A DNA stretch of 64,000 bases from the IMG/VR virus record IMGVR_UViG_3300018962_000001, positions 62,001 to 126,000 of that record; one strand, 5' to 3'. Of this stretch, positions 44,303 through 44,795 are shown piece by piece; the first letter of the stretch is position 1, and the number at the start of each line of letters is the position of its first letter. The translations under genes and the position numbers were made by a program. The notes under the pieces were generated by a model. That model was not told the origin of the DNA and searched no databases. It saw only the letters and a program-made list of their open reading frames with translations.

Positions 44303-44795
44303 CATAGCACGAAGCGCGGGGCCGAAAGACATACGGCTCCATCCAGGGCGGGATACTCCCGCAGGTACGCATCAGCGCGGCAGCCTGGAGTGCCGAGTCA
44401 GATCGGCGGCGCAGGGACGGCCATCCCGCGATTGGGGCGGTACACGGCCACGTACCTTACCAACTGCATACAGACGATTCATTGTGGGGGTCGCGGAGGC
44501 ACTCGGCAACTAGGCCGCACCGCTACGCCGCACCCCCCACGAGTGGAATCGCCACTCGTGTCTGTCCTGATCAAGCTGTGGACTCATGTTAGCGGTAGCG
44601 TGAGCCTCGCAGCGCCGGGGTTTGTGATTAATTTGACCGGCCTGATCAGGGCAGACACGAGTGGCGAATCACCATCGGCTATGTTGGGCATAGGTCGGTC
44701 ATCAGTGACGACCGCCGACTCAGGGCACGATCTCCGATTCAGCGATTAGAGATCCTGAGCGGGACAACGGACGGCTGGCCCGAAACCATGCGCGC
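44303..44795 (+). ncRNA. candidate ~490-nt structured ncRNA
   Basis: own promoter, no credible ORF, many stems including a ~24-bp helix 44548-44571/44643-44666. Confidence 0.55.

What the first reader, a model, noticed from the sequence alone, without database searches (positions are those of the whole stretch)
44303..44795. Candidate new ~490-nt structured ncRNA with its own promoter
Seen: no credible ORF. It has a ~24-bp helix (44548-44571/44643-44666) topped by a three-way junction and crossing helices TGCCGAGT/ACTCGGCA and GTGGGGGT/ACCCCCAC (a pseudoknot). Its 5' hairpin GGGGCCG/CGGCTCC-A (44318-44341) reproduces an alanine acceptor stem with G3-U70 and A73. A partial handle-like CCTTACC...GCATACA lies near 44457-44471. 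Established: large ncRNAs such as GOLLD and ROOL occur in phage tRNA arrays, and AlaRS charges G3-U70 microhelices. Its identity is unknown.
Basis: partly seen in the sequence, partly recalled or inferred. Interest (0 to 1): 0.6.

Follow-up and report, generated by a model that had tools for sequence, protein, structure and literature searches.

The report
Orphan forked hairpin in phage RNA-operon leader
Behind a genuine phage promoter lies about 540 bases of non-coding leader, in which only a central ~120-base forked hairpin is clearly non-random; it matches no known RNA family, has no relatives in any searched collection, and is most likely a processing or stability element of a tRNA/decoy-RNA operon rather than a new 490-base RNA gene.

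Summary
They include a sigma-70-type promoter from an eight-member paralogous family, no credible ORF, a 25-bp helix capped by a three-way junction, and a GGGGCCG/CGGCUCC-A hairpin.

The claim of a 490-nt structured RNA does not hold.
- Only 44538-44684 folds far better than shuffled sequence (z = -9.0).
- The 5' third scores z = -1.8 and the 3' third z = +0.6.
- The Ala-like microhelix and the proposed pseudoknot pairing occur at chance frequency.

The "handle-like" motif is real. It belongs to a family of Y-RNA-like scaffolds that fill this RNA island and accompany a Ro60-like/Ubl/E1/JAB cassette just upstream. In the candidate it is an orphan 5' half with no identifiable partner.

No Rfam family matches, and there is no paralogue in the genome. 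No homologue turned up in GenBank phages, IMG/VR, JGI metagenomes or GTDB genomes. The phage is a singleton, so covariation cannot be tested.

Best reading (confidence about 0.4): this is the leader of a polycistronic small-ORF/tRNA transcript. Its perfect 25-bp duplex would act as an RNase III-type processing or stability stalk. Interest in the finding itself is modest; the surrounding Ro-like/Y-RNA decoy island is more interesting.

The parts
44267..44296 (+). Sigma-70-type promoter (CTTGACA-N17-TATGAT), one of eight paralogous promoters. The predicted start is at about 44303-44304.
   Evidence: (family D20)
44303..44481 (+). 5' leader domain made of local hairpins. It is not significantly more structured than shuffles, and its global fold changes with transcript context.
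44318..44341 (+). 7-bp hairpin GGGGCCG/CGGCUCC with G3-U, followed by A. It resembles an Ala acceptor, but this pattern occurs at chance frequency across the genome.
   Evidence: pair probability 0.84
44455..44472 (+). Orphan 5' half-handle (CCUUACCAACUGCAUACA) of the Y-RNA-like scaffold family. No unique 3' partner was found.
44482..44542 (+). Irregular hairpin closed by GUGGGGG/CCCCCAC. Its 3' strand overlaps the first CACGAGUGG word.
   Evidence: pair probability 0.90
44538..44560 (+). Local dyad CACGAGUGG-AAUCG-CCACUCGUG. The second word is also the outer part of the long helix, and a third copy of CACGAGUGG lies at 44657. This allows alternative pairing, or it is a DNA dyad.
44549..44667 (+). 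Forked hairpin: a 25-bp near-perfect helix (44549-73/44643-67) carrying two hairpins, 44575-44613 (GCGG loop) and 44614-44641 (18-nt AU-rich loop). This is the only strongly non-random structure in the stretch.
44668..44819 (+). 3' part of the leader, with no excess structure (z = +0.6). One stable local hairpin lies at 44719-44759.
44820..45028 (+). Shine-Dalgarno AAGGAGGAGG (44820-29), an AUG-UAA start-stop (44832-37), and an orphan 54-61-codon single-pass membrane ORF (AUG at 44843 or 44864, stop at 45026-28) that abuts tRNA-Trp.
45029..45103 (+). tRNA-Trp(cca), the first tRNA downstream. RNase P cleavage here would define the 3' end of the leader.

Best explanation
The stretch is the long untranslated leader of a polycistronic transcript. 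That transcript starts at a host-type (sigma-70) early promoter at about 44303 and runs into a small membrane ORF, tRNA-Trp and further tRNAs. It is not one folded 490-nt RNA.

Its one strongly selected element is the forked hairpin 44549-44667. The 25-bp, almost perfect duplex is inferred to be cut by host RNase III, or to block 3' exonucleases. Either way it would separate or stabilise the upstream leader piece, the ~70-nt two-hairpin tip, and the downstream ORF/tRNA part. This resembles the processing stalks of rRNA operons and the RNase III sites of T7 and lambda early transcripts.

The handle-like word at 44455-72 is a remnant or half-site of the neighbouring Y-RNA-like scaffold family.

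Shown: the promoter family, the non-coding nature, the hairpin and its + strand bias, and the handle motif. Inferred: transcription, cleavage, and any role of the pieces.
For: - Promoter: 11 of 12 consensus matches, and it belongs to a paralogous family found only on the + strand.
- Leader length: other members of the promoter family have leaders of about 10-150 nt before a tRNA or ORF. This one is about 540 nt, so something in it is probably kept.
- No intrinsic terminator lies between 44303 and tRNA-Trp (sequence).
- The upstream unit ends in a GC stem followed by a U-tract at about 44195-44215.
- The structural excess is confined to the forked hairpin: z = -9.0 against -1.8 and +0.6 for the flanks.
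- The hairpin is more stable on the transcribed strand: -84.6 against -72.6 kcal/mol, with 4 G-U pairs against 2.
- It forms with probability 0.97-0.99 in every transcript context tried.
- It is unique in the genome and is its longest inverted repeat.
- Established knowledge: bacterial RNase III cleaves duplexes of about 20 bp or more, and such sites punctuate T7 and lambda transcripts and rRNA precursors.
Against: - No expression or end-mapping data could be obtained.
- There are no homologues, so no covariation.
- A processing stalk needs no elaborate tip, yet the tip alone is also better folded than chance (z = -3.0). This hints at a function of its own.
- Only one G-U pair distinguishes the strands in the long helix itself, so a DNA-level palindrome is not excluded.
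- The host, and therefore its RNase III specificity, is unknown.
Confidence: 0.4

Rival explanations
1. It is an autonomous functional ncRNA of the phage's Ro60-like/Y-RNA island. In this reading the RNA, or the forked hairpin released from it, is bound by the phage Ro60-like protein through the 5' half-handle. It would present hairpins, including the Ala-acceptor-like one, as decoys or sensors, as the neighbouring scaffolds present tRNA and rRNA mimics.
For: - The candidate lies 3.2 kb downstream, on the same strand, of a Ro60/TROVE+vWA-like gene. Known Y RNAs lie within 4 kb of their Ro60 gene on the same strand (PMC4201824).
- It sits between scaffold units U1-U3 and U4 onward, and it carries a statistically real handle word.
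- PMC4201824 states that Ro60 contacts mainly the 5' strand of the Y RNA stem.
- Homologous bacterial cassettes carry the same scaffolds with tRNA-like and 23S sarcin-ricin-loop cargos.
- It has its own strong promoter and an unusually long non-coding span.
Against: - No 3' handle or outer helix could be identified, and the reciprocal duplex test fails.
- There is no detectable similarity to rRNA, tRNA or tmRNA.
- The Ala-like hairpin is at chance frequency.
- The bacterial cassettes examined have scaffolds but no counterpart of the forked hairpin.
- The 5' domain is not better folded than shuffles.
Confidence: 0.22
2. It is a regulatory 5' UTR of the small membrane ORF. A long folded leader would control translation of a 54-61-residue hydrophobic peptide, as in type I toxin or holin-like mRNAs, through processing and the AUG-UAA start-stop next to the Shine-Dalgarno sequence.
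For: - A strong Shine-Dalgarno sequence is followed by a start-stop and then an in-frame AUG.
- The ORF has gene-like codon-position GC (0.52/0.40/0.74) and one transmembrane segment.
- An independent gene caller called it.
- The start codons are mostly paired in the ensemble, with unpaired probability 0.11.
Against: - The ORF has no homologue among 5.8 billion clusters and no informative Atlas neighbour.
- No antisense promoter was found.
- The region around the Shine-Dalgarno sequence shows no excess structure.
- The forked hairpin lies 150 nt upstream of the Shine-Dalgarno sequence and does not touch it.
Confidence: 0.15
3. It is a DNA-level element or evolutionary debris. The inverted repeat would be a protein-binding dyad, a recombination or replication site, or a MITE-like insertion. 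The rest would be decayed scaffold or tRNA material with no RNA function.
For: - The 9-mer CACGAGTGG and its complement occur three times, forming a perfect 9-5-9 dyad at 44538-60 and a degenerate one at 44657-80.
- The element has the size and shape of Correia- or ERIC-type MITEs.
- The handle word looks like a truncated copy of the scaffold consensus.
- The flanks are no more structured than shuffled sequence.
Against: - It is single-copy in the genome.
- The arm is absent from IMG/VR, JGI metagenomes and 185,579 species genomes, so there is no sign of mobility.
- The interior folds 8.6 kcal/mol better on the transcribed strand, with G-U pairs that would be A-C mismatches on the other strand.
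- There is no GC-skew change here.
Confidence: 0.15
4. It is an RNA-based processive antiterminator (put-like). The two abutting hairpins of the tip would bind the elongating polymerase, so that it reads through the many terminator-like structures of the 16-kb RNA array.
For: - It lies about 250 nt downstream of the promoter at the head of a long untranslated array.
- The tip is two adjoining hairpins totalling 69 nt, similar in size and layout to HK022 put RNAs (recalled knowledge, not tested).
Against: - put consensus features could not be tested with the tools at hand.
- Enclosure of the two hairpins in a 25-bp helix is not a put feature.
- There was no Rfam hit of any kind.
Confidence: 0.05

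Closest known systems
RNase III processing stalks (rRNA operon 16S/23S flanking helices; T7 early-region and lambda N-leader RNase III sites)
   Same: - A duplex of 20 bp or more inside a polycistronic, largely untranslated phage or stable-RNA transcript.
- The duplex encloses a folded piece and separates functional segments.
- It lies shortly downstream of a strong promoter.
   Different: - Cleavage has not been shown.
- The helix is perfect, whereas T7 sites carry an internal loop.
- The enclosed piece is only 69 nt and of unknown function.
Bacterial Y RNAs (YrlA, Rfam RF02553) and the Ro60-like-cassette scaffolds found here
   Same: - The genomic neighbourhood: same strand, less than 4 kb from a Ro60-like gene.
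- The general shape of a long stem with folded cargo.
- The candidate carries the family's 5' handle word (GCAUACA preceded by CCUUAC).
   Different: - There is no 3' handle (ACUUG or equivalent) and no outer helix.
- There is no tRNA-like cargo and no Rfam YrlA score.
- The forked hairpin's stem has no internal loop and no UACA junction.
GOLLD and ROOL large ncRNAs of phage/prophage tRNA regions
   Same: - A large non-coding stretch next to phage tRNA genes.
- Function unknown.
   Different: - No match to any Rfam model at E <= 10 on a 601-nt query.
- Most of the length is not significantly structured.
- No family of relatives exists.
Correia/ERIC-type MITEs (transcribed palindromic repeats cut by RNase III)
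   Same: - About 120-135 bp with inverted ends of about 25-31 bp.
- Located in a transcribed intergenic region.
   Different: - It is single-copy.
- No copies were found in any searched collection.
- No target-site duplication is recognisable.
tmRNA / tRNA-Ala acceptor microhelix
   Same: The sequence GGGG...CUCC-A with G3-U70 and A73, close to the 5' end of the transcript.
   Different: - There is no T-arm, no CCA (the sequence reads AUCCA), no tag ORF and no pseudoknots.
- ARAGORN finds no tmRNA in the genome.
- The pattern occurs at chance frequency.

Membership tests
Any Rfam 15 family (including GOLLD, ROOL, HEARO, OLE, raiA, tmRNA, RNase P, 6S, group I/II introns, riboswitches) | Covariance-model score at or near the family's gathering threshold | tested here: not met
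   The only hits are miRNA-precursor models on both strands of the long hairpin (33-35 bits against a gathering score of 74). These are generic long-hairpin artefacts.
tmRNA | tRNA-like domain with a T-arm and a 3' CCA-bearing acceptor formed by the 5' and 3' ends, plus a tag reading frame | tested here: not met
   ARAGORN on the window and on the whole genome finds no tmRNA. There is no GGUUCGA-type T-arm in 44303-44795.
AlaRS microhelix substrate | 7-bp acceptor helix with G3-U70, A73 and a free 3' CCA end | tested here: inconclusive
   The helix, G3-U and A73 are present. The 3' side continues as UCCAGG... with no known processing signal. The pattern is at chance frequency. Charging cannot be tested in silico.
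Y-RNA-like scaffold family of the Ro60-like cassette (this window and L008, L050, L053-L056) | 5' handle: loop word followed by an inner-helix strand ending in GCWUACA | tested here: met
   CTTACCAACTGCATACA at 44456-72. The pattern has 5 hits, all on the + strand within the RNA island, against 0.06 expected. It resembles the bacterial CCCAAC-NGCA..GCATACAAAC consensus.
Y-RNA-like scaffold family of the Ro60-like cassette | Matching 3' inner strand, 3' loop (AACUUG or a class-B loop) and outer helix closing the unit | tested here: not met
   There is no TGCAGTTGG-like partner and no ACTTG downstream. Candidate partners flanking tRNA-Trp are not reciprocally best.
YrlA (RF02553) | tRNA-like D/T-arm module and the GNCGAAN0-1G motif near the 5' end (PMC4201824) | tested here: not met
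   There is no YrlA or tRNA hit in 44250-44850 at E <= 10. The motif is absent from the 5' part.
RNase III processing site | Uninterrupted RNA duplex of about 20 bp or more in a transcribed region | tested here: met
   A 25-bp duplex with pair probability 0.99, downstream of a consensus promoter.
RNase III processing site | RNase III-dependent cleavage with 2-nt 3' overhangs | not testable with these tools
MITE | Multiple copies in the genome or in related genomes, with terminal inverted repeats and a target-site duplication | tested here: not met
   It is single-copy. A 20-22-nt arm pattern gave zero hits in IMG/VR, JGI metagenomes and GTDB genomes.
Protein-coding gene | ORF with gene-like codon statistics or homologues | tested here: not met
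   The 119-codon frame has codon-position GC of 0.58/0.59/0.65, against genes at about 0.65/0.48/0.67. There are no Pfam or PHROG hits at E <= 1-5. The JGI caller did not call it.

The most novel reading that the evidence does not exclude
The RNA is a new, large member of a decoy/sensor RNA system centred on a Ro60-like protein and a ubiquitin-like conjugation cassette. The phage's Ro60-like protein would hold it by the half-handle. Its hairpins would be presented as bait for RNA-targeting toxins or for host factors. These hairpins are the G3-U Ala-acceptor look-alike and the forked hairpin. The neighbouring scaffolds present tRNA, anticodon-arm and (in bacteria) sarcin-ricin-loop mimics in the same way.
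Probability: 0.1. Interest if true: 0.75.

Novelty: new member of a known kind. Interest (0 to 1): 0.3.

Why it matters
On its own, the finding is one orphan structured element in a phage transcript leader. It is useful for annotation, as a probable processing signal, but it does not found a new RNA class.

Its value lies in the context it exposed. A jumbo phage carries a complete Ubl/Ro60-like/vWA/JAB/E1 cassette. The same cassette is widespread in bacteria, with more than 900 homologues. It comes with a family of Y-RNA-like scaffolds whose cargos mimic tRNAs and, in bacteria, the 23S sarcin-ricin loop.

If the candidate proves to be part of that system, it would extend the range of RNAs handled by Ro60-like proteins. 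If it does not, it still marks where a 16-kb RNA operon begins and how that operon may be cut.

Tried and rejected
Homologue searches (all negative):
- blastn of 44200-44900 against 50,697 GenBank phages gave no match.
- Exact-pattern scans of the helix arm in IMG/VR, JGI metagenomes and GTDB genomes gave zero hits.
- There is no paralogue in the genome.

Searches for kin of the phage:
- The ThiF, DnaB-like helicase, major head protein and 2576-aa protein were sent to IMG/VR.
- Only the head protein has relatives, at 61% identity or less, on contigs of 5.7-59 kb (two of them complete genomes of 52 and 59 kb). None of the nine such records searched, nor the two helicase hits, carries the RNA.
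- Two near-identical contigs exist but are withheld by the tools.

Synteny:
- ThiF and Ro60-like homologues led to bacterial cassettes and one 239-kb phage-like contig.
- These carry the scaffolds but no counterpart of the forked hairpin.
- Two contigs had no DNA available.

Other checks that led nowhere:
- The small ORF has no homologues.
- Mimicry of E. coli 16S, 23S, 5S, tRNA-Ala or tRNA-Ile was not significant for the candidate.
- The scan for loop complementarity to other genome sites was uninformative.
- The class-A handle pattern in IMG/VR gave 4 chance hits.

'Giant scaffold' idea:
- The idea was that the half-handle pairs with segments flanking tRNA-Trp.
- The duplex of -35.7 kcal/mol is in the top 0.09% of genome windows, and pairing reaches p = 0.86 in an unconstrained fold.
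- The reciprocal scan finds better partners elsewhere, so the idea was set aside.

Tools and models:
- A single-sequence AlphaFold model of the 525-aa protein was too poor to use (pLDDT 41).
- PDB sequence search found nothing.

Rejected readings: tmRNA, GOLLD/ROOL, YrlA, MITE, hammerhead-type three-way junction (no core), retron (no reverse transcriptase nearby), protein-coding gene.

Full report
**Setting.**
- The window is bases 62001-126000 of a 204,685-bp IMG/VR virus record (JGI sample 3300018962).
- The genome has 60% G+C, and ARAGORN tRNA genes, 36 of them in the window.
- A major head protein (phrog_3990), a DnaB-like helicase, a CCA-adding enzyme and an RNA ligase mark it as a large tailed phage.
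- It has no close relatives. The best IMG/VR hits are 61% for the head protein (on contigs of 5.7-59 kb, two of them complete ~50-kb genomes), 36% for the helicase, and nothing for ThiF or a 2576-aa protein.

**Observation check.**
- The promoter is real by every in-silico criterion. TTGACA-17-TATGAT lies at 44268-44296.
- It belongs to a family with conserved flanks, CTTGACA...(T)GCGCTATGAT. The pattern has 7 matches, all on the + strand, against 0.02 expected. An eighth copy lies at 43785.
One slip: the word ACCCCCAC is really CCCCCCAC.
- Nothing suggests coding. The longest frame (119 codons) has GC1/2/3 of 0.58/0.59/0.65, against about 0.65/0.48/0.67 in the phage's genes. It has no Pfam or PHROG match. 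The JGI gene caller left 43790-44863 empty.

**How much of it is structured.**
- The whole stretch folds at -236 kcal/mol, z = -7.1 on the + strand and -5.0 on the - strand. That excess comes almost entirely from one element.
- Domain by domain, 44303-44537 gives z = -1.8 (10 of 200 shuffles fold as well). 44538-44684 gives z = -9.0. 44676-44900 gives z = +0.6.
- In a 200-nt sliding scan over 28 kb, the window 44550-44749 (z = -8.6) is the single strongest outlier. The next strongest, at z about -4.4 to -4.8, fall on tRNA or tRNA-like genes or on one other spot.
- When the transcript is extended to the RNase P site of tRNA-Trp, the 5'-3' closing helix (p = 0.00) and helices P2, P3 and P5 (p = 0.07-0.36) dissolve. 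The forked hairpin (0.97-0.99), the 5' hairpin (0.84), the GUGGGGG/CCCCCAC hairpin (0.90) and one 3' hairpin (0.96) persist.
- The proposed pseudoknot strand pair is an 8-nt complement. Shuffled sequences contain 1.8 such pairs on average, and it has zero probability in the nested-fold ensemble, which by construction cannot contain a pseudoknot.
- The alanine-like microhelix pattern (GGG, four complementary pairs, UCC-A, loop of 3-12 nt) occurs three times in the genome against 2.0 expected.
- The defensible observation is therefore a promoter, about 540 nt of non-coding leader, and one exceptional forked hairpin of about 120 nt.

**The forked hairpin.**
- It is the longest inverted repeat in the genome and is single-copy.
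- It is 12 kcal/mol more stable on the transcribed strand. The tip alone gives -30.1 against -21.5 kcal/mol, because of G-U pairs that become A-C mismatches on the other strand. The tip alone is also better folded than chance (z = -3.0).
- The word CACGAGUGG occurs at 44538 and 44657, and its complement at 44552. The outer part of the 5' arm can therefore also form a local 9-bp hairpin, at a cost of 15 kcal/mol. This fits either a folding intermediate or a DNA dyad.
- There is no hammerhead core, and no Rfam family matches. The miRNA-precursor hits on both strands only reflect a long hairpin.

**Context, and the handle.**
- Directly upstream lies an operon driven by the same promoter type (39202). 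It encodes a 75-residue ubiquitin-like protein ending in VFG (39285-39512) and a 525-residue protein. No Pfam model recognises the latter.
- The ESM Atlas model of the 525-residue protein matches TROVE/Ro60+vWA proteins: TM 0.73 over 443 residues, feature score 0.95.
- The operon continues with a vWA-HTH protein, a 289-residue protein, a JAB peptidase and a ThiF-type E1.
- The Ro60-like protein has more than 900 homologues at 50-59% identity, mostly bacterial, in the same gene order.
- These cassettes are accompanied by RNAs that Rfam partly recognises as YrlA (38-44 bits in L004, L008 and L050).
- The RNAs share a scaffold: outer helix, a 5' loop (CCCAAC...), an inner helix ending in GCWUACA(AAC), the cargo, the inner helix, (A)AACUUG, and the outer helix.
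- In L008 one cargo reproduces the 23S sarcin-ricin loop exactly over 15 nt, and also scores as 23S positions 1082-1155.
- The window holds the same scaffold at 43817-43938, 43960-44045, 44065-44200 and 46205-46295.
- A second class has the loop word CYUUAY. It lies at 45505-45640, 45738-45870 and 47528-47600, with a partial unit at 46690.
- The candidate's CCUUACCAACUGCAUACA (44455-72) fits this second pattern. The pattern has 5 hits, all on the + strand within 3 kb, against 0.06 expected.
- The matching 3' half is missing.
- Segments on both sides of tRNA-Trp contain AUGCAG and can pair with the half-handle. The duplex of -35.7 kcal/mol is in the top 0.09% of genome windows, and pairing reaches p = 0.86 in an unconstrained fold or p = 0.5 with the tRNA masked. 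Those segments find better partners elsewhere, so I do not count this as a closed unit.
- None of the bacterial cassettes has anything like the forked hairpin.

**What it most likely is.**
- No terminator separates the stretch from a Shine-Dalgarno sequence (44820-29), an AUG-UAA start-stop (44832-37), an orphan 54-61-codon membrane ORF, and tRNA-Trp, which abuts the ORF's stop codon.
- Other promoters of the family have leaders of 10-150 nt.
- I therefore read 44303-44842 as the leader of a polycistronic transcript. The forked hairpin is its one selected element.
- A 25-bp perfect duplex is a textbook substrate for bacterial RNase III and a barrier to 3' exonucleases (established knowledge). 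The most economical mechanism is processing and/or stabilisation that separates the leader, the ~70-nt tip and the ORF/tRNA part.
- This is inference; nothing about expression could be tested. Confidence is about 0.4.
- Rivals are: a Ro60-like-associated functional ncRNA (0.22), a regulatory 5' UTR of the small ORF (0.15), a DNA-level dyad or debris (0.15), and a put-like antiterminator (0.05).

**Comparison with known families.** It is not a member of any Rfam family, nor of tmRNA, YrlA, GOLLD or ROOL. It does not behave as a MITE (see the membership table). It works most like an RNase III processing stalk. It shares one motif with the Y-RNA-like scaffolds, but it fails their closing-helix criterion.

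**Novelty and verdict.**
- The candidate is an orphan with no comparative or expression support. It rates as a new member of a known kind (a structured processing element in a phage RNA-operon leader). Interest is 0.3.
- The most novel reading not excluded is a large bait RNA of the Ro60-like system. I give it a probability of about 0.1.
- The neighbouring Ro60-like/Ubl cassette, with its mimic-bearing scaffolds, deserves its own follow-up.

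Noticed in passing
window 39202-43789: A complete cassette sits behind a family promoter (39202). It encodes a 75-aa ubiquitin-like protein ending in VFG (39285-39512), a 525-aa Ro60/TROVE+vWA-like protein (39512-41089; no Pfam hit, Atlas TM 0.73 to TROVE/vWA_Ro60), vWA-HTH (41086-41841), a 289-aa protein, JAB (42644-43108) and a ThiF E1 (43130-43789). The same gene order is widespread in bacteria, with more than 900 Ro60-like homologues at 50-59% identity. I found no description of it in the paper library.
   Followed up: partly
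window 43817-43938, 43960-44045, 44065-44200, 46205-46295; loci L008 2760-2955, 3090-3220, 3525-3660, 5300-5400; L053 11200-11600; L054 5600-5750, 8420-8530; L055 260-350, 1660-2320: This is a family of Y-RNA-like scaffolds: outer helix / loop / inner helix ending in GCWUACA / cargo / (A)AACUUG / outer helix. It is conserved between the phage and the bacterial cassettes. Cargos mimic translation RNAs: a tRNA-like module (Rfam tRNA 50 bits at 43842-43907), an anticodon arm plus T-arm, and in L008 an exact 23S sarcin-ricin loop plus 23S positions 1082-1155. Rfam YrlA recognises only some units (38-44 bits, below gathering).
   Followed up: partly
window 45505-45640, 45738-45870, 47528-47600, about 46690-46770: A second scaffold class has the 5' loop word CYUUAY and different 3' loops. 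ARAGORN's 'tRNA-Arg(tct)' at 45538-45612 and 'tRNA-Gly(tcc)' at 45765-45836 are cargos inside such scaffolds. They lack CCA and have aberrant acceptor and D arms, so they are probably tRNA mimics rather than working tRNAs.
   Followed up: partly
window 7318, 37638, 39202, 43785, 44267, 53059, 57071, 60845 (all + strand): This is a paralogous promoter family, CTTGACA-N16-18-(T)GCGCTATGAT. Conservation extends beyond the two hexamers. These are presumably host-sigma-70 early promoters.
   Followed up: yes
window 46527-46770: A tRNA 5' part (GGGGGGGUAUAGCUCAGGUGGCAGAGCG) and a matching 3' part (handle GGUGAGCGUACA, a Phe-like anticodon arm, a T-arm, UCUCCCCACCA) are separated by about 140 nt. That gap contains tRNA-Pro(ggg) at 46604-46680. 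It looks like a nested or split tRNA-like arrangement. A similar orphan 5' part lies at 46840-46867.
   Followed up: no
window 44414-44468 versus 45016-45090: The leader segment that includes the half-handle is extensively complementary to the end of the small ORF and to the 5' half and T-arm region of tRNA-Trp. It is predicted to pair with p = 0.86 if the tRNA is not assumed to be folded. It could be a chance GC-rich match or a processing switch.
   Followed up: partly
window 44820-44845: A strong Shine-Dalgarno sequence (AAGGAGGAGG) is optimally spaced for an AUG-UAA start-stop (44832-37). The small ORF's first in-frame AUG follows 5 nt later.
   Followed up: no
window 43986-44016: The cargo of the second scaffold reads CACAGGUUGAUCACCUGC. 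It recalls the 16S rRNA 3' end (GGAUCACCUCC), but only 8 nt match E. coli exactly, which is not significant.
   Followed up: partly
window 11915-13393, 38507-39166, 32920-34383: The phage encodes a CCA-adding enzyme (phrog_2244, 8e-52), an RNA ligase (PF09414) and a WGR-domain ATP-dependent DNA-ligase-like protein. This fits a phage that makes and repairs many tRNA-like RNAs.
   Followed up: no
window 51300-51500 and 46011-46116: Two further oddities in the array. One is a region with excess structure (z = -4.5 in the 200-nt scan, -3.1 over 311 nt) near or inside an 89-codon ORF. The other is a sub-threshold tRNA hit (26.8 bits) that carries a long insertion.
   Followed up: no
locus L004 8834-9135: A 239-kb AT-rich phage-like contig carries a ThiF homologue. 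About 1 kb upstream of it are two YrlA-type permuted tRNA-like RNAs, one scored as YrlA (38 bits) and one as a tmRNA tRNA-like domain fragment. The E1/Y-RNA link therefore recurs in another large phage.
   Followed up: no
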